Shown here: positions 3,666 through 64,000 of the stretch, in pieces
Position numbering within the stretch: the first letter of the stretch is position 1
Layout of the letters: the number at the start of each line of letters is the position of its first letter
Assembly (NCBI RefSeq): GCF_963921235.1
Contig: NC_086109.1
Span: 12,462,001-12,526,000, forward strand
DNA: 64,000 nt
DNA from: Mobula hypostoma
Taxonomy: Eukaryota
Reading direction: 5' to 3'
Position numbers and translations under genes: made by a program
Notes under the pieces: generated by a model
Told to the model about the DNA's origin: nothing
Seen by the model: only the letters and a program-made list of their open reading frames with translations
The model's database searches: none

Positions 3666-3756
3666 CTTAATTTGTCTTGTGAACCATGAGACTGAAATAG
3701 TGCAGGTCAGCAGCAGAGCGAAGAGCAGCCAACGACCAACCTTCCATATCATGAAA
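3666..3756 (-). CDS. Receptor gene B/C, transmembrane exon FMIWKVGRWLLFALLLTCTISVSWFTRQIK (basic K/R at the N-terminal end of the TM)
   Basis: 91 nt between acceptor cccctttgcag| and donor |gtaggt; phase 2 to 0; hydrophobic. A paralogous 91-nt exon lies at 42717-42807. Confidence 0.85.
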
Positions 3757-9672: not shown

Positions 9673-11396
9673 AAGAACCTATGAACCACTGCCTTAAATG
9701 CACCCAGTGACCTGACCTCCACAGCCGCCCATGGCAAAGAATTCCAGTCTCACTGCCCTCCGGCTAAAGAAATTCCTCTTTATCTCTGTTCTAAATGGAC
9801 ATTCTTCTCTTTTGAGGATGTGCCCTCTGGTCCTCGACTCCCTCACCAAAGGAACATGCTCTTCCCATCCACTCTATCTAGGCCTTTGAACATTTGATCG
9901 GTTTCAATAAGATGCCCCCTTATTCTTCTAAATTCCAGTGAGTAGAGGCCCAGAGCTTTCAGTTGCTGCTCATATGATAACCCTTTCATTCTCAGAAACA
10001 TTCTTGTGAACTTCATTTGAACCCTCTCCAAAGTCAACACATTTTAGATAATTGGCCTAGAAATGCTCACCATAGTCCCAGTGAGGCCTCAACACTGCCT
10101 TACACAGCCTTAGCATTACATCCTTACTTTTACAATGCCTATAAAAAGTATTCAACCCCCTTGGAAGTTCAAGGTTTTATTGTTTTACAATATTGAATCA
10201 CAGTGGATTTAATGTATAAATGCAAACATGCTGAACAACGCTTCCACTTCTTCAGTCAAGTCCCTTATAAAAATCACAAAGGACAGAGGTTCCTGAACAG
10301 AACAAGCCTCCATTAATCAGAGAATTGAGATCAAGAGTCACGAGATAACTGTGTAATACCACTGGTCACCATCTCCTGGCAGAATACATTATCTACCAGC
10401 ACCCTCTGACCTCTGTGGGCAAACCAGTTTCAATTGTCAGAGTGTCTCAAATGAAGAGGCATAGTAGCAAGATTAGGATTGGGTAATTTAAAATTAGGTG
10501 CATAGGAACTTCTTCACAGTCCTTGGAATTCTCCACCTGGAAGGTTGTGAAAGTGGAGTGGTAGAGATATTTAAACAGAAAGTAGATATTTTTGATATAG
10601 TTCAGCAAATGGAGAAGTGGGAAAGGGCATAGAGGAGCAGGGACGGCCAGGTATAGGTCAGCCAGGATTATATTGAATAATGGAGTAGACTTCAGAGACT
10701 AAACAGCCTGCTGCGGCCATCCTTCCTGAGTTCTTGCACTAACTGCAGGTGGTTTCCACTGTTTCTTTAGTCTCTACAATTCTCTCTATTTTCCACGAAA
10801 CAAACCACTGGCAACTATTTATAGATCCAGAAGGAGCGAGTTTGAGTATTTGCTCTTTTTCAAGGATGGAACAATCTCAGTCATCAACCAGAAACATCAG
10901 CTGCTTAGACACAAAGCCACCATCGTCAGCAAGAACTGGCTGCAGACAGGAAGTACTCTGGTGAAAGACTCAGTTCTCAGCTATTGAATATGGCATTCGA
11001 TTCTCTGCAAGAATTGTCACAGCGGAGACAGAATAGTCCAGAAATGCCTGAATGCAGCCTAAAGAACATAACAGATTAACACTTCAACCCACTAACCCAC
11101 CCCTCCACAACACGCACCACCACTACATTATCATTTCATGTCACCCACCTTAGGTACAAACATTATTATGCCTAGTGTCACTTTATGGACATACACAGTC
11201 ACTACATACAAACAATCTTATGTATTTATAATTATTTTGTTTATTTATTGTTGTGTTCTATATCATATTGTTTTTTTGTGCTGTATTGGACCCTTACACT
11301 TGTGTACTAGAAATGACTTTAAGCAATCTTGAATCTTGAAAACGGTACATGATACTCAATCAATCATCCTGATGATTCGCACCCTCCACCACTTAC

Positions 11397-11708
11397 CAGT
11401 GCCAGTGATTTGAATCACAAAACTGCAATTGCCTTCCCTGTTGTAGATGGACACGTTCACTATTTCACTAGACTTTGCTCCACAAGTATTCGAGGCTGTG
11501 CAGTAATATTGATGGTGTTGGTAGTTGAAGGATTGACAATGTAGATCCAGTTTACTGGTGACAGAGATCACAGATGATGTGTTTTCATACCATGTGTATT
11601 GAATGGGAAGGGATCCCTGGACAGACTCACAGGACACTGACACGGAGCCCTCAACACACGAGACATTTGCAGGAGACAGAAATTGAAGCACAGGAACAGA
11701 CACCGGTT
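11397..11708 (-). CDS. Receptor gene B/C, C2-type Ig domain exon (membrane-proximal)
   Basis: 312 nt, phase 1-1, acceptor tctttcccacag| and donor |gtaagt. VSCESVQGSLPIQYTWY...YYCTASN motif; open frame. Confidence 0.9.
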
Positions 11709-13059
11709 CTGTGGGAAAGAATCAGTGAACATCAGAAAATCAATAAAGATTTCAGCAGCTCTGCATCTCAGCCAGGGCCAGCAGGTGGGTGTCTCACCTC
11801 TAAATCCACCTGTGTGTCTGCATCCTCCCAGATGCCTGAACTGCCACATCTGCCATTATCCCAAAACACAGCAAGACTCTGGATCAGGACAGCAGTGATG
11901 ATACTGAGAATGTGATGTGTCAGTGTGAAAATCAGGGTGCAATCTCTCTCAGCAACAAGGAGACAGTCTCCAGTGGAGTTTTTAAAAAAATCAATGCAAA
12001 TATTGTTTTAAGGTGAGAGGTGGGCAATTTAAAGGAGATTTGTGAGACAAGTTCTTTAGCTACAATGAGCGTGGTGACTGTTCTGTCAGGCAAGAAGGCG
12101 GAACAGGTATAACAACAATATTTAGAATGCATTTAGACTAACCCACAAAAAGTTTGGCACAGGTGTAATTATGGACATTTGCAGGCAGATGGAATTAGCT
12201 TAGACTGACATCATAAAATCATAGAACTATAAGACATAGGAGTAGAATTAGGCTATTTGGCCTATTGAGTTTGCACCACCATTCAATAATGTTGATATAT
12301 TTTCCCTCTCACCCCCACTCTGCTGCCTTCTCCCTGAAATCTTTGACACACTTACTGATCAAGAACCTATTAACTGCCACTTTGAGGATACCCAATAACT
12401 TGTCTTCCACAGCCTTCTGTGTCAATAAATTCCACAGATTCACCATCCTCTGGCAAAAGAAATTCATCCAAAAGGAATGTCCTTCTGTTGGCTTTCCCCT
12501 AGTCTCGACTTCTCCACTGCTGGAAACATGCTTCTCACATCTACTCTATCTAACCAGTCAATATACTATAGGTTCAATGAGATCCCATCTCATTCTTCTA
12601 AATTCTAGTGCGTAAAGCCTCAGTGCCATCCATATGTTAACCCTTTCATTCCAGGGAACATGGTCAGTGGAGCACATGATGGCCAAAGGCATCCTCAGTA
12701 TCATCACTTCTGTGCTGGCTGTTCCATGTTCAATCTTCTTCTGTAGTTCCATTTCTGCATTTTCCACATGGGAATGGTCAGGCAGGTCAGCAGGTACTAC
12801 AGGTGGGGACTTGGAGCTCCTTGACTGGTATGGAGGGAGAGAGAAAGAGAGAGATAGGGGCAGTGGGGCTGGAGAGGGTGTGACTGATCCCTGAGGTGAG
12901 ATGGGGATTGGGTTGCCCTGCTCCAGGGGGACTGAGCGGAGTCTGTTGAGCCTCAGCCTAACGGAGCCTCAGAATATTGGTGCTGCCCTGGGTCTTCCCA
13001 TGGAAAATATGGATCAGACATTTCAATGGAGATATAATGTCAATCAATGAGAAACCTAC

Positions 13060-13380
13060 CATCAGACACGTGTAGATGCACATCAAACACTGGATGATTG
13101 CCAGATGTTGTAATTCCACATCTGTAAAGTCCTGTATCTTGAGAGACGAGATTCTCCATAGTAACAGTAAATATTCCCTGGGTTGTGTTATCTCTGATTG
13201 CCATTTTTCCATACTGCTCATTTGTCCCATTTGTATCCACTAACGATGTGCATTGGTGATCCCACATGCGGCACCAATACTTTGTGTGTGAACGGTACAT
13301 TGGTGCATAGTGACAATCAATTGTGACCGTTCTTCCCACAACTCCTCTTACTTTATCTTCTGCCCATAAAGCACCTGAAA
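13060..13380 (-). CDS. Receptor gene B/C, V-type Ig domain exon, CD300/pIgR-like
   Basis: 321 nt, phase 1-1, donor GATG|gtaggt. TIDCHY...KYWCRMWDHQC...DTGLYRC, with the extra C-X6-C pair typical of CD300/pIgR V domains. Confidence 0.92.
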
Positions 13381-18000: not shown

Positions 18001-18388
18001 GTTGGTTTTTTAAAGTTCCCCAATTCTCTAACTTCCCACAAATTCTTGCTATATTATATGTCCTTCCTTTTCCTTTTATGACAGTGCCACTGTCTCATGA
18101 TTCAACACTCATTCTAGTATCTTCAGTGCAAAAACCAGAAGTATGAATGGAATGCCACCAATTTGTCTGGAGCTGCAAGTCCAGCTATGTTTAAGATGTT
18201 CCACATTTTCCAGGAGAAGTCACAGACTTAACTGTTGACTACACTTTGATCTACCCCATGGAGGCTGCAATGTGTAGCTTCTACGAATGCAAAGAATTTC
18301 CTTACCCTCAGTAGAAGTATAAGAACAGCAGTAACAGAGTAACAAAAAGAAATCTTTAAATGTATCCTTCCTTGAAAGGAGAACTTAC

Positions 18389-18709
18389 TGGTGCCATTAA
18401 TTCTTGTCACATATCCGCAGATCTCTCTGCTGTTGAAGATTGTCACATTTAGCATTCCGCTGGATTTTATTCCAAGCCTATTTGAGGCTTTGCAGTAATA
18501 TTGATGGGCTTGGAGGTCTAAGGATTGACAAGGTAGAACCAGTTCATTGGTGTCTGAGATCATTTGATCCCCAGATGAGGTTTGTTCATACCATGAGTAC
18601 TGAATGGGAAGGGATCCCTGGAGAGATTCACAGGACACTAACACGGAGCCACCGAGATGGGAGACATTTGCTGGTGACAGATTTCGAAGCACAGGGACAG
18701 ACACAGTTT
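18389..18709 (-). CDS. Receptor gene B/C, C2-type Ig domain exon
   Basis: 321 nt, phase 1-1, acceptor ccttcccacag| and donor |gtaagt. VSCESLQGSLPIQYSWY...YYCKASN; paralog of 11397-11708. Confidence 0.9.
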
Positions 18710-18769
18710 CTGTGGGAAGGAATTGAACAATCAGACACTGAATGAACATCTGAAAATCAAACTCTCTTC

Positions 18770-19319
18770 TGCCACTGTATTAGGTACACCTGTTCACCTG
18801 CTTGTTAATGCAAATATCTAATTAGTCTATCATCTGGCAGCAACACAGTACATAAAAACATGTAGACATACTCAAAAGATTCAGCTGTTGTTTAGACCAA
18901 ACATCAGAATGGGGAAGAAATGTGATCTTAGTGACTTTGACCATAGAATGATAGCTGGTGCCAGACAGGGAGGTTTGAGTATCTCAGGAACTGTTGAATT
19001 CCAGGAATATTCATACATAGTCTGCAGACTTTACAGAGAATGGTGCAAAAAGCAAAAAGTATCCAGTGAGCAGCAATTCTGTGAGCAAAAATGACTGGTC
19101 AATGGGAGAGGTCAGAGGAGAATGGCCAGGTAGTTTCAGGCTGACAGAAAGATGACAGAAATTCAAATAAACATGTGCTATGACAGTTATGCAGAGGAGC
19201 ATCTGGGCACACAACCCACAGTTAAGCTTAAAGGTAATGGGCCACAGCAGCAGAAGACCATGAACATATTCCTTGGCCAATTTATTAGTTATAGGAGGTA
19301 CCTAATAAAGTGGCCACTG
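18770..19319 (+). mobile_element. Internally deleted Tc1-like element (transposase N-terminus only)
   Basis: MGKKCDLSDFDHRMIAGARQGGLSIS...; terminal repeat GTACCTAATAAAGTGGCCACTG ends at 19319. Related partial copies lie near 20620-21072, 32790-33230, 40345-40425 and 56660-57575. Confidence 0.8.
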
Positions 19320-20618: not shown

Positions 20619-21449
20619 AGTGCCTATGGTCAAGAGATTCAGTTGTTGTTCAGGACAAATATCAGATGGGGAGGAAATGAGATTTTAGTGACTTTGACCA
20701 TGCAATGATAGTTGGAGTCAGTCGGGGCGGTTTGAATACCTCAGAACCTGTTGATGTCCTGGGACTTGCATGTTTAACAGTCTTCAGAATGGTGTGAAAA
20801 ACAAGAAATATCTAGTGAGCAGCAATTCCGTGAACAATAATGCCTTGATAATGAGAGAGGTCAGAGGAGAATGGCCAGACTGGTTCATGCTGACAGAAAG
20901 ATGACAGAAATTCAAATAACCTCATTTTATGACAGTGGTGTGCAGAAGAGCATCTGAACACACAAGACATCAAAGCTTGAAGTGAATGAATCACAGCAGC
21001 AGAAGACCATGAACAGACGCTCAGTGGCCACTTTATTTGGTATAAGAGTTACCAAATGAGGTGCCCACTGAGTGTTTAAAGGCAGCAACTTGTGAGATAC
21101 CCATCACATGTTTAGTGGCTTTCAGGCGGAAATGAAATTGCGACTGGGTTCAGTGACCTGCCATAGAGAGGGAAACATGTGGCACTGATATTAATGCAGA
21201 AATAGTGAGAGATGGACAGAGTCAGGACAAAGGTCCTGTAATCTGTGCAGAGGCTGAGCAGGAGGAGGAGGAGATTGCTGTTCTTCAAACACATCCACAA
21301 GATGGGCATTTCTCCACTGTACAAGCTTAACCCTGGGATCAGCACATCGTCACTCCCCAGGACATCTAATACACTGACCCTTCCCAGGGGAAACATGGAT
21401 AAGACATTTATTTTACTGAAGGCACAAAGTCAATCACTGAGAAACCTAC

Positions 21450-21770
21450 CATCAGATACTTGTAAATGTACATTAAATATCGGATCATGACCTGGTGTTG
21501 AAATCCCACAGCTGTACCATCCTGTATCTCCAGAGTGAAGATCCTCCACAGTAACAGTAAATATTTCCCATTCTGGGTTATCTGTGATTGATGCTCGTCC
21601 ACTCCGTCTGTGTTGCCCATTTGTTTCCATTAAAACTGAACATTGATGAGTCCATCCATGACACCAATACTTTGTGCGTGAGTGGTACTTTGCTTCATAG
21701 TGACAATGGATTGTAATCGCTCTTCCCACAACTCCTCTTACATATTTCTCTGCCCACAATGCACCTGAAA
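21450..21770 (-). CDS. Receptor gene B/C, N-terminal V-type Ig domain exon, CD300/pIgR-like
   Basis: 321 nt, phase 1-1. VSGALWAEKYVRGVVGRAITIHCHY...KYWCHGWTHQC...DTGWYSC; open frame with canonical splice sites. Confidence 0.92.
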
Positions 21771-23132
21771 CTGAGAGAGGCATTTTCAGATTTGAGGGGA
21801 AAGGAACAACTTAATGCAAACAAATAACTTTGAACATGATGGTAAAGCAGGTCCAGGTCATATCCGGCCTGTGGTCCATGACAGCACAGCCAGTGACTTT
21901 GGTTTGAAGTGCAGTCAGTGCTTTTACTGTGTCAGCACATTAAATTCCCACTGTAGAATCCTGAACAGAAACCCAGGGCTGAATTTCTAGTGCAGTATTG
22001 AAGGAGAGCCACAATGTAGTCTATCAATTACCTCAGACCATGTCACCCTTTCAAAGTACACTAAGTTCCCAGAGAACTCATTTGGGATGCTCCTGAGTGT
22101 GCGTCTCGGAATGCAGGGAACTCAGAAGTTGGAATGGGGATTGGTAGGACCATTTGAGATCATGTTTCAATTCTCTCCATGTCCTGACATCCTCCACTAA
22201 CAGACACGTTTATAAACTTCAGAAAGAAACCCATCATGATGTCTGAAACTGTGTCTTCTGGTTCTGATGGAAATTTTATCTTTTGTGTTTGTCAAGTGTT
22301 TCTATGTGCAGTTAGAAGGTGTGCAACAGTGGTCGTTACCACTTCCGTGTCTAGAAATCCAAGTGTGATTTCTATTTCTAAAAGGATACATTGGAAGTTT
22401 AAAGATAATTTGTTAGTTGTTTTGGAATTAAAAACCACATCAGTAATGATAAACATCAGCTACCAGAGTGTCAAAATCCCATCTGGATCAGAAAGGCCTT
22501 TAGAGGCAGAAATCTCTCATCCCTACACACCTTGGTTTACCTTTGACTCCAGATCTAGTAATGTTCATTACTAATTGCTCCACTGAAATGGCCCAGGAAA
22601 GATTGATTGAAAGGTAGTAACATCGATTGTCATAGTGATCCCTGCAGAGTGAGATCAGATTCCGTCAATGGTAGACGTGATGTTCTCGCTTAAAAGCCCC
22701 CAGAAAATTTCTCCACCTGGACGTATTCTCTCCCCACCTGGCTCCACGCGATTCCCCTTTTCTCCTTACCTGCTTTCCCACTCACTCATCAGCAAACTCC
22801 ACTCCTTTCCCTCCCCATTCCATTTGTCTGTCGTGCTTCACCCTTCCTCAGTCCCCGACAACCGAGTGGACCCAGTCTCACACCTCCCCCTCTCCTATAT
22901 ACACTATCTCCCTCTCCACTCACACTTGATGAGGGGTCTCGAACCAAACCGTTGACATTTTCCCCTCCCCTGACAGATGCTGCTTGAGCTGCTGAGCTCC
23001 TCCAGCAGCTCCTCTGAACTCCAGATTTCTGACATCTTTAGTGCCTACAGATATTCAAGTACTCTTCTGGAAACAATGTACAGCCCCAAGGAAACATTGA
23101 TTAAAGAATGTCCAGTGCTGGTTGTCACTCAC

Positions 23133-24433: not shown

Positions 24434-27306
24434 GGAGCATTCGTAATAAGGTGGATGAATTGAAAGTGCAGATTGTTATTAATGATTATGATATAGTTGG
24501 GATCACAGAGACATGGCTCCAGGGTGACCAGGGATGGGAGCTCAACGTTCAGGGATATTCAATATTCAGGAGGGATAGACATGAAGGAAGGTGAGGTGGG
24601 GTGGCGTTGCTGGTTAAAGAAGAGATTAATGCAATAGAAAGGAAGGACATAAGCCGGGAAGATGTGGAATCGATATGGGTAGAGCTGCGTAACACTAAGG
24701 GGCAGAAGACGCTGGTGGGAGTTGTGTACAGGCCACCTAACAGTAGTAGTGAGGTCGGAGATGGTATTAAACAGGAAATTAGAAATGTGTGCAATAAAGG
24801 AACAGCAGTTATAATGGGTGACTTCAATCTACATGTAGACTGGGTGAACCAAATTGGTAAAGGTGCTGAAGAAGAGGATTTCTTGGAATGTATGCGGGAT
24901 GATTTTTTGAACCAACATGTCGAGGAACCGACTAGAGAGCAGGCTATTCTGGACTGGGTTTTGAGCAATGAGGAAAGGTTAATTAGCGATCTTGTCGTGA
25001 GAGGCCCCTTGGGTAAGAGTGACCATAATATGGTGGAATTCTTCATTAATATGGAGAGTGACATAGTTAATTCAGAAACAAAGGTTCTGAACTTAAAGAG
25101 GGGTAACTTTGAAGGTATGAGACGTGAATTAGCTAAGATAGACTGGCAAATGACACTTAAAGGATTGACGGTGGATATGCAATGGCAAGCATTTAAAGGT
25201 TGCATGGATGAACTACAACAATTGTTCATCCCAGTTTGGCAAAAGAATAAATCAAGGAAGGTAGTGCACCCGTGGCTGACAAGAGAAATTAGGGATAGTA
25301 TCAATTCCAAAGAAGTAGCATACAAATTAGCCAGAGAAAGTGGCTCACCTGAGGACTGGGAGAAATTCAGAGTTCAGCAGAGGAGGACAAAGGGCTTAAT
25401 TAGGAAGGGGAAAAAAGATTATGAGAGAAAACTGGCAGAGAACATAAAAACGGACTGTAAAAGCTTTTATAGATATGTAAAAAGGAAAAGACTGGTAAAG
25501 ACAAATGTAGGTCCCCTGCAGACAGAAACAGGTGAATTGATTATGGGGAGCAAGGACATGGCAGACCAATTGAATAATTACTTTGGTTCTGTCTTCACTA
25601 AGGAGGACATAAATAATCTTCCAGAAATAGTAAGGAACAGAGGGTCCAGTGAGATGGAGGAACTGAGTGAAATACATGTTAGTAGGGAAGTGGTGTTAGG
25701 TAAATTGAAGGGATTGAAGGCAGATAAATCCCCAGGGCCAGATGGTCTGCATCCTAGAGTGCTTAAGGAAGTAGCCCAAGAAATAGTGGATGCATTAGTG
25801 ATAATTTTTCAAAACTCGTTAGATTCTGGACTAGTTCCTGAGGATTGGAGGGTGGCTAATGTAACCCCACTTTTTAAAAAAGGAGGGAGAGAGAAACCGG
25901 GGAATTATAGACCGGTTAGCCTAACGTCGGTGGTGGGGAAACTGCTGGAGTCAGTTATCAAGGATGTGATAACAGCACATTTGGAAAGCGGTGAAATGAT
26001 CGGACAAAGTCAGCATGGATTTGTGAAAGGAAAATCATGTCTGATGAATCTCATAGAATTTTTTGAGGATGTAACTAGTAGAGTGGATAGGGGAGAACCA
26101 GTGGATGTGGTATATTTGGATTTTCAAAAGGCTTTTGACAAGGTCCCACACAGGAGATTAGTGTGCAAACTTAAAGCACACGGTATTGGGGGTAAGGTAT
26201 TGGTGTGGGTGGAGAATTGGTTAGCAGACAGGAAGCAAAGAGTGGGAATAAACGGGACCTTTTCAGAATGGCAGGCAGTGACTAGTGGGGTACCGCAAGG
26301 CTCAGTGCTGGGACCCCAGTTGTTTACAATATACATTAATGACTTGGACGAGGGAATTAAATGCAGCATCTCCAAGTTTGCGGATGACACGAAGCTGGGT
26401 GGCAGTGTTAGCAGTGAGGAGGATGCTAAGAGGATGCAGGGTGACTTGGATAGGTTGGGTGAGTGGGCAAATTCATGGCAGATGCAATTTAATGTGGATA
26501 AATGTGAAGTTATCCACTTTGGTGGCAAAAATAGGAAAACAGATTATTATCTGAATGGTGGCCGATTAGGAAAAGGGGAGGTGCAACGAGACCTGGGTGT
26601 CATTATACACCAGTCATTGAAAGTGGGCATGCAGGTACAGCAGGCGGTGAAAAAGGCGAATGGTATGCTGGCATTTATAGCGAGAGGATTCGAGTACAGG
26701 AGCAGGGAGGTACTACTGCAGTTGTACAAGGCCTTGGTGAGACCACACCTGGAGTATTGTGTGCAGTTTTGGTCCCCTAATCTGAGGAAAGACATCTTTG
26801 CCATAGAGGGAGTACAAAGAAGGTTCACCAGATTGATTCCTGGGATGGCAGGACTTTCATATGAAGAAAGGCTGGATGAACTGGGCTTGTACTCGTTGGA
26901 ATTTAGAAGATTGAGGGGGGATCTGATTGAAACGTATAAGATCCTAAAGGGATTGGACAGGCTAGATGCAGGAAGATTGTTCCTGACGTTGGGGAAGTCC
27001 AGAACGAGGGGTCACAGTTTGAGGATAGAGGGGAAGCCTTTTAGGACCGAGATTAGGAAAAACTTCTTCACACAGAGAGTGGTGAATCTGTGGAATTCTC
27101 TGCCACAGCAAACTGTTGAGGCCAGTTCACTGGCTATGTTTAAGAGGGAGTTAGATATGGCCCTTGTGGCTACAGGGGTCAGGGGGTATGGAGGGAAGGC
27201 TGGGGCGGGGTTCTGAGTTGGATGATCAGCCATGATCATAATAAATGGCGGTGCAGGCTCGAAGGGCCGAATGGCCTACTCCTGCACCTATTTTCTATGT
27301 TTCTAT
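24434..27306 (+). mobile_element. Young CR1-clade LINE (APE endonuclease plus RT), slightly 5'-truncated
   Basis: 871-aa open frame 24601-27216 with GDFN, YLDFQKAFDKV, GVPQGSVLGP and FADD motifs; in-frame TGA at 24592-24594; (TTTCTATG)n tail. Confidence 0.96.
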
Positions 27307-43545: not shown

Positions 43546-43592
43546 GCCAGTTATTTTGTTTGAAGTACAAAATCAGTCTCTGAGAAACCTGC

Positions 43593-43912
43593 CATCAGAT
43601 ACTTGTAGATGTACATTAATCATCAAATTGGGACCTGTTGTTCTAGTTCCACAGCTGTACCATCCTGTATCTCCAGAGCGAAGATCCACCATAGTAACAG
43701 TAACTGTTCTCCATTCCATGTTATCTGTGATTGACAGTCTTCCTCTCCATCTGTGATGCCCATTTGTTTCCACTAAAACTGAACAACTGACGGTCCATCC
43801 ATGGCACCAATACGTTGTGCACGAGTGGTGCATTGCTTCATAGTGACATTCGGTTGTGATCTCTCTTCCCACAACTCCTCTTACGTATTTTCTGCCCACA
43901 ATGTAACTGAAA
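43593..43912 (-). pseudogene. Gene A V-type Ig exon with a 1-nt deletion and a GC donor
   Basis: 320 nt versus 321 in both paralogs. GCAGAAAATAC versus GCAGAGAAATAT gives TAA soon after the exon start; donor is GATG|gcaggt. No leader exon was found upstream. Confidence 0.8.
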
Positions 43913-47504: not shown

Positions 47505-50463
47505 TATAGATAATGACAAGAAAGAACATAATTGTATAAGGGCTAAGAGAGTTGTAAAAGAGCTCCTGAAGGCTTTGTGTGTCAATGCAAGGAGCATTTG
47601 TAATAAGGTGGATGAATTGAAAGTGCAGATTGTTATTAATGATTATGATATAGTTGAGATCACAGAGACATGGCTCCAGGGTGACCAAGGATGGGAGCTC
47701 AACGTTCAGGGATATTCAATATTCAGGAGGGATAGACATGAAGGAAGGTGAGGTGGGGTGGCGTTGCTGGTTAAAGAAGAGATTAACGCAATAGAAAGGA
47801 AGGACATAAGCCGGGAAGATGTGGAATCGATATGGGTAGAGCTGCGTAACACTAAGGGGCAGAAGACGCTGGTGGGAGTTGTGTACAGGCCACCTAACAG
47901 TAGTAGTGAGGTCGGAGATGGTATTAAACAGGAAATTAGAAATGTGTGCAATAAAGGAACAGCAGTTATAATGGGTGACTTCAATCTACATGTAGATTGG
48001 GTGAACCAAATTGGTAAAGGTGCTGAGGAAGAGGATTTCTTGGAATGTATGCGGGATGGTTTTTTGAACCAACATGTCGAGGAACCAACCAGAGAGCAGG
48101 CTATTCTGGACTGGGTTTTGTGCAATGAGGAAGGGTTAATTAGCAATCTTGTCGTGAGAGGCCCCTTGGGTAAGACTAACCATAATATGGTGGAATTCTT
48201 CATTAAGATGGAGAGTGACATAGTTAATTCAGAAACAAAGGTTCTGAACTTAAAGAGGGGTAACTTTGAAGGTATGAGACGTGAATTAGCTAAGATAGAC
48301 TGGCAAATGACACAAAGGATTGACGGTGGATATGCAATGGCAAGCATTTAAAGGTTGCATGGATGAACTACAACAATTGTTTATCCCAGTTTGGCAAAAG
48401 AATAAATCAAGGAAGGTAGTGCACCCGTGGCTGATAAGAGAAATTAGGGATAGTATCAATTCCAAAGAAGAAGCATACAAATTAGCCAGAGAAAGTGGCT
48501 CACCTGAGGACTGGGAGAAATTCAGAGTTCAGCAGAGGAGGACAAAGGGCTTAATTAGGAAGGGGAAAAAAGATTATGAGAGAAAAGTGGCAGGGAACAT
48601 AAAAACTGACTGTAAAAGCTTTTATAGATATGTAAAAAGGAAAAGACTGGTAAAGATAAATGTAGGTCCCCTACAGACAGAAACAAGTGAATTGATTATG
48701 GGGAGCAAGGACATGGCAGACCAATTGAATAATTACTTTGGTTCTGTCTTCACTAAGGAGGACATAAATAATCTTCCAGAAATAGTAGGGGACAGAGGGT
48801 CCAGTGAGATGGAGGAACTGAGCGAAATACTTGTTAGTAGGGAAGTGGTGTTAGGTAATTTGAAGGGATTGAAGGCAGATAAATCCCCAGGGCCAGATGG
48901 TCTGCATCCTAGAGTGCTTAAGGAAGTAGCCCAAGAAATAGTGGATGCATTAGTGATAATTTTTCAAAACTCGTTAGATTCTGGACTAGTTCCTGAGGAT
49001 TGGAGGGTGGCTAATGTAACCCCACTTTTTAAAAAAGGAGGGAGAGAGAAACCGGGGAATTATAGACTGGTTAGCCTAACGTCAGTGGTGGGGAAACTGC
49101 TGGAGTCAGTTATCAAAGATGTGATAACAGCACATTTGGAAAGCGGTGAAATCATCGGACAAAGTCAGCATGGATTTGTGAAAGGAAAATCATGTCTGAT
49201 GAATCTCATTGAATTTTTTGAGGATGTAACTATAGTAGAGTGGATGGGGAGAACCAGTGGATGTGGTATATTTGGATTTTCAAAAGGCTTTTGACAAGGT
49301 CCCACACAGGAGATTAGTGTGCAAACTTAAAGCATATGGTATTGGGGGTAAGGTATTGATGTGGCTGGAGAATTGGTTAGCAGACAGGAAGCAAAGAGTG
49401 GGAATAAATGGGACCTTTTCAGAATGGCAGGCGGTGACTAGTGGGGTACTGCAAGGCTCAGTGCTGGGACCCCAGTTCTTTACAATATATATTAATGACT
49501 TGGATGAGGGAATTAAATGCAGTATCTCCCAGTTTGCGGATGACACGAAGCTGGGTGGCAGTGTTAGCTGTGAGGAGGATGCTAAGAGGATGCAGAGTGA
49601 CTTGGATAGGTTGGGTGAGTGGGCAAGTTCATGGCAGATGCAATTTAATGTGGATAAATGTGAAGTTATCCACTTTGGTGGCAAAAATAGGAAAACAGAT
49701 TGTTATCTGAATGGTGGCCGATTAGGAAAAGGGGAGGTGCAAAGAGACCTGGGTGTCATTATACGCCAGTCATTGAAAGTGGGCATGCAGGTACAGCAGG
49801 CGGTGAAAAAGGCGAATGGTATGCTGGCATTTATAGCGAGAGGATTCGAGTACAGCAGCAGGGAAGTACTACTGTAGTTGTACAAGGCCTTGGTGAGACC
49901 ACACCTGGAGTATTGTGTGCAGTTTTGGTCCACTAATCTGAGGAAAGACATCCTTGCCATAGAGGGAGTACAAAGAAGGTTCACCAGATTGATTCCTGGG
50001 ATGGCAGGACTTTCATATGAAGAAAGACTGGATGAACTGGGCTTGTACTCGTTGGAATTTAGGAGATTGAGGGGGGATCTGATTGAAACGTATAAAATCC
50101 TAAAGGGATTGGACAGGCTAGATGCAGGAAGATTGTTCCCGATGTTGGGGAAGTCCAGAACAAGGGGTCACAGTTGGAGGATAAAGGGGATGCCTTTTAG
50201 GACCAAGATTAGGAAAAACTTCTTCACACAGAGAGTGGTGAATCTGTGGAATTCTCTGCCACAGGAAACAGTTGAGGCCAGTTCATTGGCTATATTTAAG
50301 AGGGAGTTAGATATGGCCCTTGTGGCTACGGGGATCAGGGGGTATGGAGGGAAGGCTGGGGCGGGGTTCTGAGTTGGATGATCAGCCATGATCATAATAA
50401 ATGGCGGTGCAGGCTCGAAGGGCCGAATGGCCTAGTCCTGCACCTATTTTCTATGTTTCTATG
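47505..50463 (+). mobile_element. Second young CR1 LINE, same subfamily as 24434-27306, with frameshifts
   Basis: Near-identical by eye to the first copy. TGA at 47749-47751, frameshifts near 48315 and 49235, TAG near 49875; same tail. Confidence 0.95.
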
Positions 50464-56049: not shown

Positions 56050-56620
56050 TCTTGAGTGAATATTGTAGAACTCAGAAAGAGGAGCAAGGGCATTTTGACA
56101 TTTGTAGGGGTGATCTAGCCTCCAAGAGGACCACAACCTTGTCAAGGTTTGAAGGCTTGTGTGCCTCAGTGACCCAGAGAGCTATGCTTTGTCTCTTGGT
56201 AGGGTTATCCTTGCCAATCAGGTCAAAGTGCAGAGGCCAGACTAAGAGTGGTCCACCGGTCCTCCAGGTTCGGGGTTTCAGCTCAGGGCTAACAACCCTG
56301 ACAGGTAAAACAAAACTGTTATAGAAACAGCAATGAAGAGTCCTTCTGCATCTGAGTGAGATGGTATTGCTGATTCTCAACCTGGGATTTGCCCAGCTAC
56401 CAAGAGTGAAAACTGAGAGGAAGCTACTGACATGATGAAGGAAGCCCTGAACACCACCAGAGATGGAGGACATTCATTGGTGCCCAAAATGCCAGCAGCT
56501 GAACGGGCAGTAACACAGAGAGATCTAGACTCAGACCCTTGCTTCCAATAGGTCATACTTGCTGATGAAGAGGAGCTAGAAAGGGGCCTGGGTGGAAGAA
56601 GCAGCTCAGAAAAAAGCTTG
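56050..56620 (+). mobile_element. RTE-derived non-autonomous element, 5' region
   Basis: Contains GGTCCACCGGTCCTCCAGGTTCGGGG...GGCTAACAACCCTGAC, recalled as an RTE 5' UTR; no RT motifs. Confidence 0.45.
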
Positions 56621-57622
56621 ACAAAGTAATTATGTGGATAGATTAAAGCAAAAGAGTTACACTCAGTGGCCACTCGATTGGGTACACCTGTTCACCTGCT
56701 CATAACGCAAATTCCTAATCAGCCAATCATGTGGTAGCAATGTGATGCATAAAAGCATGCAGATCTGGTCAAGAGGTTCAGTTGTTGTTCAGAACAAACA
56801 TTGGAATGGAGAAGAAATGTGACATAAGCGATTAACAAAAAAAAAGATCCAGTGAGTGGCAGTTCTATGCGTGCAAATGCCTTGTTACTGAGAGAGGTCA
56901 GAGGTGTTGGAAACCACTGCATTTTTAAAGTAATTCTTTCTATAAGATCTGTACTTTTTAAAAAACTCACGTATTTTTCACCGTACGTGCTGGTTTGTCC
57001 CCACTCATTGGCAGAAAGCGTTATAGCAGTTAAACTCATGGTTTATCATTTTTCTCATTTTTCACTGGGTAAGTATTAGCACATTACCCACGTGAGGTAA
57101 TTGTTTCAATTATGTATTGTATTAAGCCATTTTTTCTCTATAAGGAATTCTACTTAGCTATAAAAGTAATGGATTTTTCAGAGGTGCCATCTTTTTGCCT
57201 TTGTATTCTTTGCTGTTCATTTACCTCTTACTTTGTTACTCAGCTCTTAATTTATTTTGCTTTGTATTTGTCTGTTTGTTTGTAGTTTAAAATAAACAAT
57301 CATTAGAATTAAGATGCACATCCTTCCTGACTCCCAGAAGAACCAGAAGAAAGATTAAATAAAGAGGTCTTATAGAGGACAATGGCCAGACTGGTGGAAG
57401 GTGACAGTAATTTAAATAAACATGTGTTACAACAGTGGTGTGCAGAAGAACACTTTTCAATGCAGAACACACTGACATACATGCTTTTATGCATCTAGTT
57501 GCTGCTACATGATTGGCTGATTAGATATTTTCATTAACAAGCATCAACAGGTGTACCTAATAAAGTGGCCTCTGAGCGCAACTCTTCTGCCTTAATTCAT
57601 CCACATAATTACTTTATCAAGC

Positions 57623-57877
57623 TTATTCCAAGTCCTGTGGGGTACGAGGAGAGGAAGTTTTCCGTTTGGGCCTTGCGGGTTGGCTCTGAAATTTGATATC
57701 TGCGTAGGTGACACTGTCCTCATCAGTAAAAGAGTGCACTGCTCTTGATCTTCTTTTAAATTTCACGTTGGCATACACATTTCCATTTTCACTGTTAGCC
57801 AACTGGGCAGCTGCCTCATTGCTTCGAACATGGTGTAGATCTGCATAAACGATGTTTTCTTCCATCATGGCCAGTTC
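57623..57877 (-). CDS. Inhibitory receptor, terminal exon with ITIMs (IVYADL, VTYADI, and ITIM-like NVYANV)
   Basis: Acceptor tttatcatttcag|, phase 0; 84 codons then TAA at 57623-57625; three evenly spaced YA[DN][LVI] motifs. Confidence 0.88.
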   Translation of the reverse strand, partial: ELAMMEENIVYADLHHVRSNEAAAQLANSENGNVYANVKFKRRSRAVHSFTDEDSVTYADIKFQSQPARPKRKTSSPRTPQDLE

Positions 57878-59074
57878 CTGAAATGATAAATAACTTCCAA
57901 GATCTATTTTATGTCTGTTGAATGTGAAAGGTGAGGGTGTGAAAGGTTACTGGGAGAAGGCAGGAAAATAGGGTGGAAGGAAAATAAATCAGTCATGATT
58001 GAAGGGTGGAACAGTCTTGATGGGCCAAATGGCCTAATTCTGCTCCTATACCATATGATCTTACGGTTTTAAGTTCCTCCAATTTTTAAAAATAACTATC
58101 CTATGTTCATAACTCAAGTTCTTTTCTGATCTGTAAGTGGAAACACCTTCACTATCCTGTAAAACAATTGGATAGTCTTGAACACATCTACTAGATCACC
58201 CTCAGTTTTCTCTCTTTAAATAAACCCTGATCCTTTAAATAAACCCTCAACTTCTAGAATTTAATTTTCCAGAGTGGTTGATAACAGCTTATGACTCAAT
58301 GACTGTGATCCTCAGTCAGGACCCACTACTAACTGGGCAACAACAGCATGTTGCTTTACAACACCAACATGCTAAGCTGGTCCAAGGTGTTTCACAGAGT
58401 TTAGCAAGAGAAGAGTTTCAAAATGAACTTGAGAATTATTTGGGCAAATTACAATATTTTTAGGATTTACAGTCTAAATGGTTTGTTGTAGGAGGTTAAT
58501 TGATCACATGGGTGTAATTAGGTGGCTCGTGGGTCGGAAGGACCGGTTACTCTGCTGTATCTCTAATGAACAAAAGTTAAGAGGACAGAATTGCAGGAGT
58601 TCATGGTGTTAAGTCTAGTGTGTGGGATTTGGGCAGCTGAAGCTACCGACATTGGTAGTGGGATTCCAAGACTGGAGGATGCACAAGAGGAACAAACAGT
58701 TCTCTGAGGGTACAGCTCTTGGAGAGAACGTGATGCAAAGAAGGGAAAATGTACGGCAGAGCAGAATCCTTCAGCAATCTCCACTCTGCAGTTAGTTACC
58801 TTTGGAAAAGTGAAAAGCAACTGATGAAATTGTGAAATTGAGAAAGCTCTTTGATGATATTGACCTTAATTATTCAATTTGGAAAAATTAAATCAATTAG
58901 AACATTAATTATTGAAGGTAATAATAACAAGCAAGCTGAAAACTGTGGAAAATATCATGAACAAAGATTGTTGATAACAGACCTAAGGGTCAATAGAATA
59001 TTCATACTGGTGTCAGGATTGAGGGGTAGGGTGAGAAAGTGGGTGGGTGAGGTCAGCACAGGACAGATACTTAT

Positions 59075-59295
59075 TTAAAGATACAGCTTGGTAACAGGCC
59101 ATTCTGGCCCAACAAGCCCGTATTACCCAATTAAACTCATGTGACCAAATTAACATACTAACCTCTTTGGAATGTGGGAGGAAACCAGAGCACCCAGAGG
59201 AAATCCACACGGTCACGGAGAGAACATAAAACCTCCTTACAGAGAGGAGTGGAAATGAACCCAAGGTACTGGCGCTGTTTAGTGTTACACTAACC
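59075..59295 (-). mobile_element. V-SINE (HE1-type); further copies at about 59870-60160, 61855-62135 and 63690-63965
   Basis: Central domain GGATTTCCTCTGGGTGCTCTGGTTTCCTCCCACA, a tRNA-like head and a LINE-like tail. Confidence 0.75.
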
Positions 59296-59763
59296 ACTAA
59301 GCTACTGTGTCATCTCTAAAATTGTTATTCTTAATTGATCTGACCCATTTTTTCTGATTTCACATTGAGTTTGAGACTCAGAGGGAATATACAAAATGTA
59401 AACTGAAAAGCCATTGAACCCAAAGACAGATTTACACAATTAGATGCTCCATCTCTAACAGTAGAGAAAGGACCAATCTCACTCTTCACCATTCAGTAAT
59501 GATAATAAAGACTGGAGCCACTTAGATGAACAGTCAGGTAAAATATTATAGACGCACTTTAGGAAAAGCTGGATGAGCAGAACAGAAAGAGACAAATAAC
59601 CCGAAGGATAGGCCAATAGAAATCAATGAGGGGGGGTTCGGAGGTTTGTGTCTAATATAAATACTAGACTGGACTAGTGGGGATTAATGAGCTGTAAACT
59701 CCCATGTAATCCAATTTCTAAACATTCTGAAGCATTCAGACAATTTATACTTCAAGTCCGTAC

Positions 59764-59810
59764 CTGGGTATCCTTGTTGCCTTCTCCGTGAGTTGTGTTG
59801 TGCTTAGATT
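59764..59810 (-). CDS. Inhibitory receptor, cytoplasmic exon (E)SKHNTTHGEGNKDTQ
   Basis: Acceptor gtattttccag| and donor CAG|gtacgg; 47 nt; phase 1 to 0, bridging the TM and ITIM exons. Confidence 0.75.
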
Positions 59811-62669
59811 CTGGAAAATACAACATTACTGCTAAAAATTCCATGTCAGGAACAGACATAAAGATTTATTTATTTGTTTATTTAGTGATACAGCACACAG
59901 CAGGCAATTTCAGCCTTCCCCAGCAACCCTGGACAAACCAGATTAACCGTAACCTAATCATGGTGCAATTTCCATTGACCAATTCACCTACCCGGTACGT
60001 CTTTGGACTGTGGGAGGAAACTGGAGGACCCGGAGTGTATCCATGCATCCCACAGGGAGGACATACAGAGACTCCTTTCAGAACGGCACTGGAATTGAAC
60101 TGCAAACTTCAGAACGCCCCGAGCTGTAATAGCTTCACATGAACCACTAGGTTACCATGACACCCATACTGAATCTCAGAACCACGGGAACCCCAGCTGC
60201 AACACAGTAGTGATTCTTCACACAGAGCAAACCTCTGCTCTGGTTACTGCACAATGTTCAGAAAGGATCATATTGTTTTTTACCTCACCTTCTCTGCTAC
60301 TGAAAACTAACGTTTATCATCTTTGAACATTATGATAAAGGTTTTGGATTTGAAATTTTATCTTTCTTTTTATTGCTACAAATTCTGTCTGATTTACCTA
60401 CATTTCCTTCATTGTCTGTGTGTGTGTGCTTAGAGAATATTTCTCCTTCACAATATGATGGAGCAGATTACCTGACAATATTCACACTGTCCCATGAACA
60501 TCTCACTGATCTCCCCAGGACTCTGTGGTAGATTGTCCCTCAGGCAGGAGGAACAAACTGCCCAAAATAAAAATCATCTCATTTACCAACTGACCATAAA
60601 TCCTTTCAAATTCAACACCAAGATAAACAATTTCATATGGAAACCGAATGTCCCATCCTCAATGAACGGCTTTGATGGCCTTAGACTATTAGTGAATCTC
60701 ATGTTCCTTCCTGATATAGTTTGCTATTTTATTTCTAGCCACTAGATATCACTGCTTACTTGTAAGTTTACAGCAGTTTTTCATTCCTTACTACTGTGTT
60801 TCTAAGCAATTGACCTTTGACATTAGGTTGGCCTTTTTATAATCACTTGTGTACTTATTCGTTCATTTATCAGAAACAACTTGTGATGAGTCAAAGGAAT
60901 TTTAATCAACATTTGAATCCATCTCTTGTGAGAACAGCTAGAAGCATTGTCTTTTTACTCAGCTCCTTGTGCACTGCAATGCATTGGTGACCAATAAAAC
61001 CACCTTCAGACTACAACTACACCTGGACTGGAGTTTATCTATCTGTCTAGTCTAAAAAATAGGGAAAACCCTTGAGTGAGGGCAGAATAGTGCAAGTTGA
61101 ATTGTGAACAGATTTTATTTCCCAAATCCTGCTTCCCATTTTTTAATTAATGGTAGTTAACCATATAAAGAGAAATTTCAAAGGAAATCAAGAGCAGTAC
61201 ATTCTATTACTGATGAGGATAATGTCACCGATGCAGAAATCAAATCTCAAAGCCTGCCCATCTTTAAATCTTCATTTATCCTATTACTACCCACCTTTTG
61301 TCTCACACGTCATCATTCCTTATGAACTTATTCTGTCCTGTACTCCCTCAGAAACCCTCTCTTTTGTGCTTCCTTCCGTACTTCCTCTGCATCTCAAGAC
61401 TCGTTATTGCTCACATATTCCAGTTCTGATGCAAGACCATTGCCTTGAAGGATCAGCTGTTCCTCTCTCCATAGCTGCCATCTGACATGCTGTGCATCCC
61501 TAGCACTTTTCTGCCTATATCTCAGGGAATATTTAGGGAATTTCTCTTTGGAAAAGAATGCATTCCTTTGGTTCAGATCTTTGCAATAAACACTGGCTAG
61601 GGGATAATACTACGCTGAAAGTAATTGTCTGGTTTGTTGGGGAGAGAGAGAGAGAGAGAGGCCAGAAACTAAATCACGGGGAGCAGTTGAAATATTAGTT
61701 GTCTTAATTTTCAGCCAGTGAGTTGGAGGCTGCAGGGGCTTTATTTTCCAGTGTTCAACTCCATTTCCCCATCTAATAATAACACAGAGATGATCTCTGT
61801 ACTCACAGTTCTCTTCAATGGTTTACAAAGTCTACTTAAAGGACACAAGATTACTTATTTATTTATTTATACATCACAGAGTAAACCCTTCTGGCCCTTT
61901 GTGCCACGCTGACCCAGTGACCCCGACAAGCCTGATTAAACTTAATCCAATCATGGAACAATTTACAATGACCATATAACTCTCTTTGGAGAGTGGGAGG
62001 AAACTGGAGCACCCAGAGACACGTTCAATGGGCTGGACACAGAGACTCTGTACAGAACAACATCGGAATTGAACTCCGATCTCCAAAAAGCCCCAAGGAG
62101 TAACAGTGTGGTGCTAACCCCTACGCTACCGTGGTGCCCATCTCAGGATCATCTCAGCAAAGCAGACCCGTGACTTAATCTACAGCAACCAATGAGAGCA
62201 GGGTACTTTGTCCAGTGATATATAGTGAGTGGTAGATAGGTGAAAGATACACCTGATCTTTTTTTTTTGAGAATGACATGAGAGAATGAGTTTACACATA
62301 CATTGTCCAAATGATTGCTTTTAATTTGGAAGTTGTACTGAGGAACAGCTTATGGAATACACCTTCAAATACAACAGCTAATTCCCCAAAACTGAGTACA
62401 ACAGTGAGACCACCTAAATCTTTCTTCAACCCAGCCTCTTGGTTCTCTGCCATTCCACACCTGAGGTGAGATTCCATCACCTGATGTTTCAGGAATAATG
62501 GAGTCACCAGGTTCAGTGGAAGCAACACCATTTTATCATGTGTTGTAAACCAACAAATTGGCACTCTAATCCTGGCTTTTTGTTGACGGCAACGAAATCA
62601 AGTTCTTTAAGGTTCAGCTGCTAGTTATCATATTCATCATGAAATAATTAAAGGAAAAAAGAAACCTAC

Positions 62670-62761
62670 CCCTGTTTTTTCTCTTCAGGTAGCAAAGTAG
62701 ACAAATGACAAGTAGTATGAGAAGAGTTCCAACGACACTGAGCACAATTATGTAAGTAGGC
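62670..62761 (-). CDS. Inhibitory receptor, transmembrane exon PTYIIVLSVVGTLLILLVICLLCYLKRKNR
   Basis: Acceptor attctttaccacag| and donor |gtaggt; 92 nt; phase 2 to 1; uncharged TM followed by a basic stop-transfer segment. Confidence 0.88.
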
Positions 62762-63446
62762 CTGTGGTAAAGAATAGGAAAGGGTCAGTCCTGGTTTGAA
62801 ACTTATTCTTGGCCATTTGTAAAGTCTGACATTTACACAGCATTTTTCATGCATTCAGGATGTCTGCAGATCAGAAAATGAACATTAGACACTGTTGACA
62901 GTGTGGGAAATTGCAATAGCCGATCTGCTCACAGCAAGGTCTCACAAGTAGAAATGTGACCACGACCAATGATAGCGATTTGGTTAAAGAGTAACTATTG
63001 TCCGGGCTATTTGGGAACCCTCACATGTTCTTTTACAAACATTTCATTGGAACTGTTACATTAAAGAATTGATTGGTGGCTTCTTCTCTGACAGACAGAG
63101 TTGCTGACCATGTAGCCGAACCTCTTCTTTGAATGGTTTCCATGGTTTTCTTTGTTTTGCGGCTGTCTGGACCCTTGTTTGGCTTGGACGAGTCAGGCTG
63201 AAGGGCCTGTTGTTCTAATATACAACAATGACTTTAGTACTCAGAATATTTAGGGTAAGAAGATTATCTTTGATCTCAGGCTTGACACCTGTACAAGAAA
63301 ATCAGTTTCCAACACATCATTTCATTGAAGTTAATCATGTCAAATGTTTTTAATACCAGTTAAAGAGAAACAGATTTCTCTCCCAACTGGCTCTATTTGG
63401 AAGGAGTAGCAGTGAAACCAGCCGTAGAGAGAAACTTATACTTTAC

Positions 63447-63525
63447 ATTTTATCTGATTTAGATTCTTCCCCTTGTGTAGTTGTCGTAGATTCTGTCACA
63501 GTATTTTCACAGAAATGGATTGGCC
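63447..63525 (-). CDS. Inhibitory receptor, stalk exon (G)PIHFCENTVTESTTTTQGEESKSDK(M)
   Basis: Acceptor gattttcttttaacag| and donor |gtaaag; 79 nt; phase 1 to 2; Thr-rich. The Ig exons presumably lie beyond the window. Confidence 0.78.
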
Positions 63526-64000
63526 CTGTTAAAAGAAAATCAAATTAAATTTTATCTGCTTTGTATTTGCAAAAACAAGAGAGCACAATCGGTGGACCAA
63601 TGGGTACTTGAGCACGGTAGACCAAAGGTGATCTGTTATCCAATACACATTTAAAGATTAAAGATGAGATTTATTTGTCATATGTTCATCAGATCACACA
63701 GTGAAATGCATTGTTAGCAATGACAACCAACACAGCATATTTTCTGGGGGAAGCCTGCAAGTGTTCCATGCTTCCAGCACCAAAATGGCTTGCCTATGAA
63801 TTACTAATACTTGCCCGTGTGCCTTTGGAACGTGACAGGAAATCAGAGTACCCAGAGGAAACCCACACAGTCACTGGGAGAATGCACAAACAACTTGCAA
63901 CAGTGGTGGGAATTGGGCTCCGGTCGCTGATCACTGGTGCTGTAGTGGTGTTATGCTTATTGCTGTTCTCCTGAGCACCCAATTACATTCACTGACAATT

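What the first reader, a model, noticed from the sequence alone, without database searches (positions are those of the whole stretch)
57623..63525. Inhibitory receptor with three tyrosine motifs in one terminal exon
Seen: four exons chain in frame to GPIHFCE...DKM-PTYIIVLSVVGTLLILLVICLLCYLKRKNR-ESKH...TQ-ELAMMEENIVYADL...NVYANV...VTYADI...DLE*. Known: IVYADL and VTYADI fit the ITIM consensus [IVLS]xYxx[LVI]; NVYANV is non-canonical. Inference: the three YA[DN]x motifs, spaced about 23 aa apart, may come from internal duplication. The phase-1 stalk with xxCE matches the activating gene's stalk, suggesting a C2-containing ectodomain upstream of the window.
Basis: partly seen in the sequence, partly recalled or inferred. 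Interest (0 to 1): 0.7.

Follow-up and report, generated by a model that had tools for sequence, protein, structure and literature searches.

The report
Ray immune receptor's inhibitory tail
These four exons are the real, already annotated 3' end of a lesser-devil-ray immune receptor gene of the skate "MDIR2" (pIgR/CD300-like) family, whose tail carries the usual docking motifs for signal-dampening phosphatases; it is an ordinary member of a known family.

Summary
On the minus strand, four exons (63447-63525, 62670-62761, 59764-59810, 57623-57877) have canonical AG/GT borders and compatible phases. They splice to 157 aa: stalk with Cys, uncharged membrane span, and a tail with IVYADL, NVYANV and VTYADI at Tyr spacings of 24 and 23 aa. 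This product is letter for letter the C-terminus of RefSeq XP_062921374.1 (LOC134355435, Mobula hypostoma), whose upstream part is alternating V and C2 Ig domains. A red-stingray orthologue is 80% identical without gaps. The tail matches clearnose-skate MDIR2 (BLASTP 3e-33), a family described in 2006. In 26 shark and ray tails the three tyrosines are kept in 22, 26 and 24 sequences. The Asn in NVYANV is unique to this copy; the orthologue has IVYANV. An ancestral fourth C-terminal motif is missing here. Internal duplication has modest support: 0.2% of shuffles reach the observed self-match. The window also holds activating partners with an Arg in the membrane span. The scan found a like inhibitory/activating pair 687 kb away in this genome (s1-141849) and judged it ordinary. 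Verdict: real and correctly read, but already annotated. Phosphatase recruitment is inferred, not shown.

The parts
63447..63525 (-). Stalk exon (GPIHFCENTVTESTTTTQGEESKSDK + 2 nt of Met), phase 1 in; membrane-proximal Cys
   Evidence: 100% tblastn match to P0014 residues 869-895
62670..62761 (-). Transmembrane exon (PTYIIVLSVVGTLLILLVICLLCYLKRKNR), no charged residue in the span
   Evidence: exact suffix match to P0014
59764..59810 (-). Short cytoplasmic exon (ESKHNTTHGEGNKDTQ)
   Evidence: junction residues RESK and TQE recur in homologues
57623..57877 (-). Terminal coding exon, 84 codons plus TAA stop, carrying all three tyrosine motifs
   Evidence: 81% identical to the end of Hemitrygon XP_072886821.1
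57836..57853 (-). Motif 1 IVYADL, canonical ITIM
   Evidence: Tyr kept in 22 of 26 homologous tails
57764..57781 (-). Motif 2 NVYANV; Asn at -2 is non-canonical; it also fits pYxN
   Evidence: Tyr kept in 26 of 26 tails; Asn at -2 only in this gene, orthologue has IVYANV
57695..57712 (-). Motif 3 VTYADI, canonical ITIM
   Evidence: Tyr kept in 24 of 26 tails
57251..57256 (-). First AATAAA after the stop; likely poly(A) signal, 3' UTR about 370 nt
   Evidence: inference only

Best explanation
The stretch is the 3' part (stalk, membrane span, two cytoplasmic exons) of LOC134355435 of the lesser devil ray. This is a type I membrane receptor of the elasmobranch MDIR2-type branch of the pIgR/CD300/TREM-like Ig superfamily. 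Its ectodomain lies beyond the window and is made of alternating V and C2 domains. Shown here: the exon structure, identity with the public protein model, orthology with a stingray gene, homology of the tail to skate MDIR2, and conservation of the three tyrosines. Inferred from what is established for ITIM receptors: when ligand brings the receptor next to an ITAM-coupled activating receptor, Src-family kinases phosphorylate the tail tyrosines. The paralogues in this cluster with an Arg in the membrane span are such candidate partners. IVYADL and VTYADI, and perhaps NVYANV, then dock the SH2 domains of SHP-1, SHP-2 or SHIP, which damp the activating signal. The 23-24 aa spacing suits tandem SH2 binding. 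The three motifs probably arose by ancient internal duplication, before sharks and rays split.
For: Canonical splice sites and phases. Exact identity of the 157 aa with the end of XP_062921374.1. 80% ungapped identity over 585 aa with Hemitrygon XP_072886821.1. BLASTP 3e-33 to MDIR2 ABC86796.1 over stalk, TM and tail. Tyrosines kept in 22, 26 and 24 of 26 tails from sharks, skates, sawfish, electric ray and stingrays. V domains of the model are nearest to pIgR D1 and CLM-1/CD300 among solved structures. Activating-type TM exons with Arg lie in the same window. MDIRs are described as multigene activating/inhibitory receptors (PMC3031540). The internal self-match is reached by 0.2% of shuffles. 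Words of the terminal exon and UTR are held at 0.41-0.53 in five small runs guessed to be RNA, against 0.05-0.19 for the whole 5.9 kb.
Against: There is no biochemical evidence for phosphorylation or phosphatase binding in any elasmobranch member that I could find. The second motif has lost its canonical -2 residue in this copy. The public model has 8 Ig domains where the orthologue has 4, so the 5' part may be a merged or read-through prediction. The gene's own leader could not be inspected.
Confidence: 0.8

Rival explanations
1. The exons are intact, but the gene is a relic or works only as part of a chimera. It may have lost its own leader exon, and the 1025-aa public model may join the ectodomain exons of an upstream (activating-type) gene to this gene's V-C2-V-C2-stalk-TM-tail.
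For: P0014 residues 441-1025 match the whole mature 4-Ig stingray orthologue at 80%, while residues 1-426 match it at only 68%. The model spans 64.5 kb. Unverified first-reader notes place a flipped leader exon about 30 kb, and an Arg-type TM exon about 36 kb, beyond the window's end, both inside the model's span.
Against: All four exons here are open with good splice sites. Identity with the orthologue is ungapped over 585 aa, unusual V domain included. About half of the terminal-exon words occur in small runs that may be RNA. The notes on the leader were not checked by anyone.
Confidence: 0.12
2. The receptor is not purely inhibitory. The invariant middle tyrosine in YANV (YANM in paralogues) is a pYxN / pYxxM site for Grb2 or PI3K p85. 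The tail would then give mixed signals, as reported for some mammalian CD300 members and for the adaptor SIT.
For: Tyr 2 is the only tyrosine kept in 26 of 26 tails. Its +2 Asn is frequent and many stingray paralogues have Met at +3. TM plus tail scores 30.3 bits against Pfam SIT, cut-off 27.6, and 21 of 24 family tails hit it.
Against: Without the membrane span the SIT score falls to 16.8 bits, E 0.01, so about half of the score comes from the hydrophobic span. In sharks, skates and the direct orthologue, motif 2 is a plain ITIM (IVYANV, IIYATV, IMYAAV). Motif matching alone does not show binding.
Confidence: 0.15
3. The chain is a chance set of open frames in repeat-rich intron-like DNA.
For: The region is full of SINE and transposon copies.
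Against: Exact identity with a RefSeq protein, and conservation in nine other species and in the clearnose-skate MDIR2 protein.
Confidence: 0.01

Closest known systems
XP_062921374.1, uncharacterized protein LOC134355435 (Mobula hypostoma RefSeq model)
   Same: Its last 157 residues are identical to the product of these four exons, so it is the same gene.
   Different: Nothing differs in this part. The model carries no functional name, and its 8-Ig N-terminal part may be over-extended.
XP_072886821.1, polymeric immunoglobulin receptor-like (Hemitrygon akajei)
   Same: Orthologue: 80% identity without gaps over 585 aa. Same stalk Cys, TM, exon-junction residues, three tyrosines and DLE end.
   Different: It has its own leader and only four Ig domains. 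Its motif 2 is the canonical IVYANV.
MDIR2, modular domain immune-type receptor 2 (Raja eglanteria, ABC86796.1; Cannon et al. 2006, cited in PMC3031540)
   Same: Same family. V-C2 ectodomain, stalk with Cys, uncharged TM, RESK juxtamembrane exon start, and a homologous tail with tyrosines in the same places (BLASTP 3e-33).
   Different: 35% identity. MDIR2 has lost Tyr 1 (AARVNL), has a 14-aa insert before motif 3, and keeps a fourth C-terminal PIYASV that this gene lacks.
Mammalian CD300A / CD300LF (CLM-1) inhibitory receptors
   Same: The V domain is of the same pIgR/CD300 type (CLM-1 E 1e-17). They also have a tail with several ITIM-like tyrosines and paired activating relatives with a charged TM (own knowledge).
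   Different: CD300 molecules have one V domain and no C2 domains (own knowledge). No orthology was shown and the tails are not alignable with the tools used.
Polymeric immunoglobulin receptor (pIgR)
   Same: Best solved-structure match of the V domains (E 4e-38 and 7e-31). This is the source of the RefSeq name 'pIgR-like' given to paralogues.
   Different: pIgR has V-type domains only and a transcytosis tail without ITIMs (own knowledge). This receptor alternates V and C2 domains and has an ITIM tail.
SIT (SHP2-interacting transmembrane adaptor, Pfam PF15330)
   Same: TM plus tail of 21 of 24 family members hit the SIT profile over nearly its whole length, 30.3 bits for this gene. Both have a Cys near the membrane and ITIM plus YxN tyrosines.
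   Different: The hit falls below threshold (16.8 bits) once the TM is removed. SIT has no Ig ectodomain. Homology is not established.

Membership tests
ITIM-bearing inhibitory Ig-superfamily receptor (functional class) | Type I membrane protein with an uncharged membrane span | tested here: met
   PTYIIVLSVVGTLLILLVICLLCYL has no Arg, Lys, Asp or Glu. The activating paralogues in the window have WKVGRW.
ITIM-bearing inhibitory Ig-superfamily receptor (functional class) | At least one cytoplasmic [ILVS]xYxx[ILV] | tested here: met
   IVYADL and VTYADI, conserved in the family.
ITIM-bearing inhibitory Ig-superfamily receptor (functional class) | Ig ectodomain on the same chain | tested here: met
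   It lies outside the window. XP_062921374.1 ends in these exons and has 4 V-set and 4 C2/Ig_3-type domains.
ITIM-bearing inhibitory Ig-superfamily receptor (functional class) | Tyrosine phosphorylation and recruitment of SHP-1, SHP-2 or SHIP, with inhibition of ITAM signalling | not testable with these tools
   This needs phosphopeptide pull-down or cell assays.
MDIR (modular domain immune-type receptors), MDIR2 type | Sequence homology to a founding member | tested here: met
   BLASTP 3e-33 between P0014:840-1025 and ABC86796.1. The skate intermediates are 74-75% identical to MDIR2.
MDIR (modular domain immune-type receptors), MDIR2 type | Ectodomains of the pIgR/CD300/TREM-like kind | tested here: met
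   The top solved-structure matches of two V domains are pIgR, CLM-1, CMRF35, TREM and NKp44. The description of MDIRs is in PMC3031540.
MDIR (modular domain immune-type receptors), MDIR2 type | Multigene cluster mixing inhibitory and activating forms | tested here: met
   The window holds three V exons, two C2 exons and two Arg-type TM exons besides this tail.
Mammalian CD300 family (as orthologue) | Single V-type Ig domain ectodomain | tested here: not met
   The model and the orthologue alternate V and C2 domains. That CD300 has a single V domain is own knowledge.
pIgR proper | V-type domains only, and a tail with transcytosis signals rather than ITIMs | tested here: not met
   C2 domains are present and the tail is of ITIM type. 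The pIgR features are own knowledge.
SIT adaptor family (PF15330) | Pfam match above the gathering score that does not rest on the membrane span | tested here: inconclusive
   30.3 bits with the TM (cut-off 27.6) and 16.8 bits without it.

The most novel reading that the evidence does not exclude
In the stingray lineage the MDIR2-type tail is being worn down from four docking tyrosines towards two. The ancestral C-terminal fourth motif (xIYAxV) is kept in skates, sawfish, an electric ray and a sevengill shark. Here it was cut off by a premature stop at the place of a Gln codon (E-stop-A here, against E-Q-A in the long forms). That stop now sits on the edge of a 150-nt inverted-repeat arm. This copy has in addition spoiled motif 2 (Ile to Asn at -2), leaving a pYxN site. 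If real, tail erosion or rewiring would be a way to tune the strength or sign of paired-receptor signalling.
Probability: 0.2. Interest if true: 0.3.

Novelty: already known. Interest (0 to 1): 0.15.

Why it matters
It matters little beyond bookkeeping. The finding confirms that the devil-ray genome holds a cluster of paired inhibitory and activating receptors of the MDIR / pIgR-CD300-like family. It also lets an "uncharacterized" RefSeq protein be filed with skate MDIR2. The conserved three-to-four-tyrosine tail across sharks and rays shows that this signalling module is old, and it gives a defined peptide set for testing SHP-1, SHP-2, SHIP or Grb2 binding in cartilaginous fish. No member of this family has been tested biochemically, as far as I could find.

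Tried and rejected
After that I sent no query or range holding those places to any search tool. Only local scripts used the whole-window file, as a BLAST subject. (2) Spliced cDNA-derived fragments: a search with the 157-aa tail for short proteins gave only two genome-derived stingray models. (3) DNA beyond the window: the look-up of encoding contigs listed the gene (64.5 kb) and the orthologue (24 kb) but returned no DNA. The leader, the V/C2 exons and the orthologue's 3' end could therefore not be read. (4) Cannon et al. 2006 and 2010 are not held, so MDIR is cited through PMC3031540. (5) Homology of the tail to the adaptor SIT: about half of the score rests on the membrane span, so I left it as a resemblance. 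(6) A profile of the tails against solved structures gave only TM-driven noise. (7) Relic of the fourth motif: none is recognisable after the stop or beyond the inverted-repeat element. Only the Ala codon after the stop agrees with the long forms. (8) Chance ORFs: rejected by exact identity with a RefSeq protein. (9) No complex prediction was run, because unphosphorylated peptides would not be informative.

Full report
**What is there.** The gene lies on the minus strand.

| Exon | Coordinates | Borders |
|---|---|---|
| Stalk | 63447-63525 | acceptor ttaacag, donor gtaaag |
| Transmembrane | 62670-62761 | acceptor accacag, donor gtaggt |
| Short cytoplasmic | 59764-59810 | acceptor ttccag, donor gtacgg |
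| Terminal | 57623-57877 | acceptor tttcag, stop TAA at 57623-57625 |

- The phases fit. The stalk exon enters in phase 1, and the split codons AT|G and G|AA give Met and Glu.
- The product is 157 aa: a stalk with one Cys (IHFCE), an uncharged membrane span, and a 105-aa tail.
- The tail carries IVYADL, NVYANV and VTYADI, with tyrosines 24 and 23 residues apart.
- Two motifs fit the ITIM consensus. The middle one has Asn at -2 and does not.

**Which gene it is.**
- A HMMER search of the terminal exon against 1.84 billion representatives gave nine hits. The best is a 597-aa "polymeric immunoglobulin receptor-like" protein of the red stingray Hemitrygon akajei, 81% identical at its very C-terminus.
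- A search seeded with that protein's tail found Mobula hypostoma XP_062921374.1, "uncharacterized protein LOC134355435", 1025 aa.
- Its last 157 residues are identical to the spliced product. The window is therefore lesser-devil-ray DNA, and the public annotation already uses exactly these junctions.
- The gene spans 64.5 kb, of which the window holds the last 5.9 kb.
- Before the stalk the model has four V-set and four C2-type Ig domains in alternation.
- The stingray protein (leader-V-C2-V-C2-stalk-TM-tail) aligns to residues 441-1025 of the Mobula model at 80% identity without a single gap. It aligns to residues 1-426 at only 68%.
- The second half is therefore the true orthologue. The 8-Ig form may be real, or it may be a merged or read-through prediction.
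- I could not read the DNA beyond the window.

**Family.**
- The V domains of the model are closest, among solved structures, to pIgR domain 1, CLM-1/CD300, CMRF35, TREM and NKp44.
- A search from a skate homologue's tail returned "modular domain immune-type receptor 2" of the clearnose skate, ABC86796.1.
- The stalk, membrane span and tail of the present gene align to it with E 3e-33.
[quoted passage not shown] 2006).
- The window fits that picture. It holds three V exons and two C2 exons and two membrane-span exons with the activating signature WKVGRW near 3746 and 42797.
- One of those activating genes has a stalk, EYSCE, like the IHFCE here.

**Conservation of the tail.** I aligned 26 tails from stingrays, devil rays, sawfish, electric ray, skates, white shark and sevengill shark.
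- Tyr 1 is kept in 22 sequences, Tyr 2 in all 26 and Tyr 3 in 24.
- Tyr-Ala of motifs 2 and 3 are among the few columns that are at least 85% identical.
- Asn at -2 of motif 2 occurs only in this gene. The orthologue has IVYANV, the sharks IIYATV and ITYAEV, and the skates IMYAAV.
- Many stingray paralogues have TVYANM at this place.
- Skates, sawfish, Narcine, Heptranchias and one stingray paralogue carry a fourth motif (xIYAxV) at the extreme C-terminus. This gene and most stingray copies stop earlier, after QD[LS]E.
- The long forms read QDSEQA there and this gene reads QDLE-stop-A. A nonsense change of the Gln codon is therefore a simple explanation (inference).

**Internal duplication.**
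- The best ungapped self-alignment of the tail lies at offset 24 and scores 42.
- 500 shuffles gave 23.5 +/- 4.1, and 0.2% of them reached 42.
- With positions -2, 0 and +3 left out, the flanks of Y1/Y2 and of Y2/Y3 still score in the top 0.5% and 0.8% of control registers. Y1/Y3 does not stand out (7%).
- This supports an old duplication, older than the shark-ray split, but shared kinase and SH2 constraints could give part of it.
- One Hypanus isoform shows a fresh tandem copy of the same module.

**Mechanism.**
- Shown: the anatomy, identity and conservation above.
- Inferred from established ITIM biology: Src-family kinases phosphorylate the tail when the receptor is brought next to ITAM-coupled partners.
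- Inferred: the phosphorylated ITIMs dock SHP-1, SHP-2 or SHIP, which damp the signal.
- Inferred: the 23-24 aa spacing suits tandem SH2 domains.
- The middle YANV also fits pYxN (Grb2), and YANM in paralogues fits pYxxM. A mixed signal cannot be excluded.
- TM plus tail hits Pfam SIT at 30.3 bits, cut-off 27.6, and 21 of 24 family members hit it. Without the membrane span the score is 16.8 bits, so I treat this as a resemblance only.

**Expression.**
- I sent no query or range holding those places to any search tool afterwards.
- Indirectly, five small runs (guessed, not recorded, as RNA; two studies) hold 0.41-0.53 of the sampled words of the terminal exon plus UTR. They hold only 0.05-0.19 of the words of the whole 5.9 kb.
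- This is what spliced RNA would give, but it is weak evidence.

**Verdict.** The finding is real and was read correctly. It is the already annotated 3' end of an MDIR2-type inhibitory receptor gene in a known kind of paired-receptor cluster. An earlier follow-up in this scan reached the same judgement for a like pair 687 kb away (s1-141849). No member of the family has been tested biochemically in the papers I could search.

Noticed in passing
window 61172-61259 (+), inside the intron between the TM exon and the short cytoplasmic exon: A decayed, inverted copy of about 90 nt of the middle of the terminal exon, from motif 2 to just past motif 3. It is 84% identical over 83 nt. The copy has a stop codon, and motif 3 reads VTDAEI (Tyr to Asp).
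   Followed up: partly
window 56611-56759 and 57480-57627: Two inverted-repeat arms of about 150 nt, 84-85% complementary, enclose about 1 kb directly after the gene. The outer edge of the right arm overlaps the stop codon (57623-57625). The inner part of the arms is a dispersed repeat (another copy lies at 18771-18864), but the outer 50 nt are shared only by these two arms. It is unclear whether this is a transposon end or a local inverted duplication of the 3' UTR.
   Followed up: partly
outside the window: residues 664-775 of XP_062921374.1 (P0014) and 236-347 of XP_072886821.1 (P0001): The membrane-proximal V domain of this gene has Trp in place of the B-strand Cys (ITIDW) and Leu in place of the C-strand Trp (K[FY]LC). 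The same pair of changes is kept in the stingray orthologue and in none of the other V domains matched by the pattern scan of the fetched proteins. It is therefore a conserved oddity and not decay. This agrees with first-reader note s1-142954.
   Followed up: partly
window about 3746 (-) and 42797 (-); stalk about 6921 (-): Two activating-type membrane-span exons (IWKVGRWLLFALLLTCTISVSWF and TWKVGRWLLFALLMIGTSSVMWF) with an Arg in the span, and a stalk EYSCE. They belong to paralogous genes whose V exons lie at 13040-13339, 21430-21783 and 43573-43899 and whose C2 exons lie at 11356-11703 and 18228-18749.
   Followed up: partly
window 24601-27216 (+) and 47758-50372 (+): One open 871-aa endonuclease/reverse-transcriptase ORF of a LINE, and a second copy of the same element broken into four ORFs. 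Both lie between the receptor genes.
   Followed up: no
window 59100-59290, 59880-60130, 61860-62110, 63700-63980: Several copies of a tRNA-like SINE sit in the introns and upstream of the stalk exon.
   Followed up: no
P0013 (Hypanus sabinus isoform X2, 704 aa): This Atlantic-stingray isoform carries a tandem second copy of the tail module (MATLENNIVYTDL...GTVYAEM followed again by MATLEENVVYTDL...). The module therefore still duplicates.
   Followed up: no
locus (gene range of P0014): The collection also lists a 1350-residue product with V-set, Ig and faint SIT hits on the opposite strand, running over the whole 70-kb locus. This may be a conflicting or nested gene model in this cluster.
   Followed up: no
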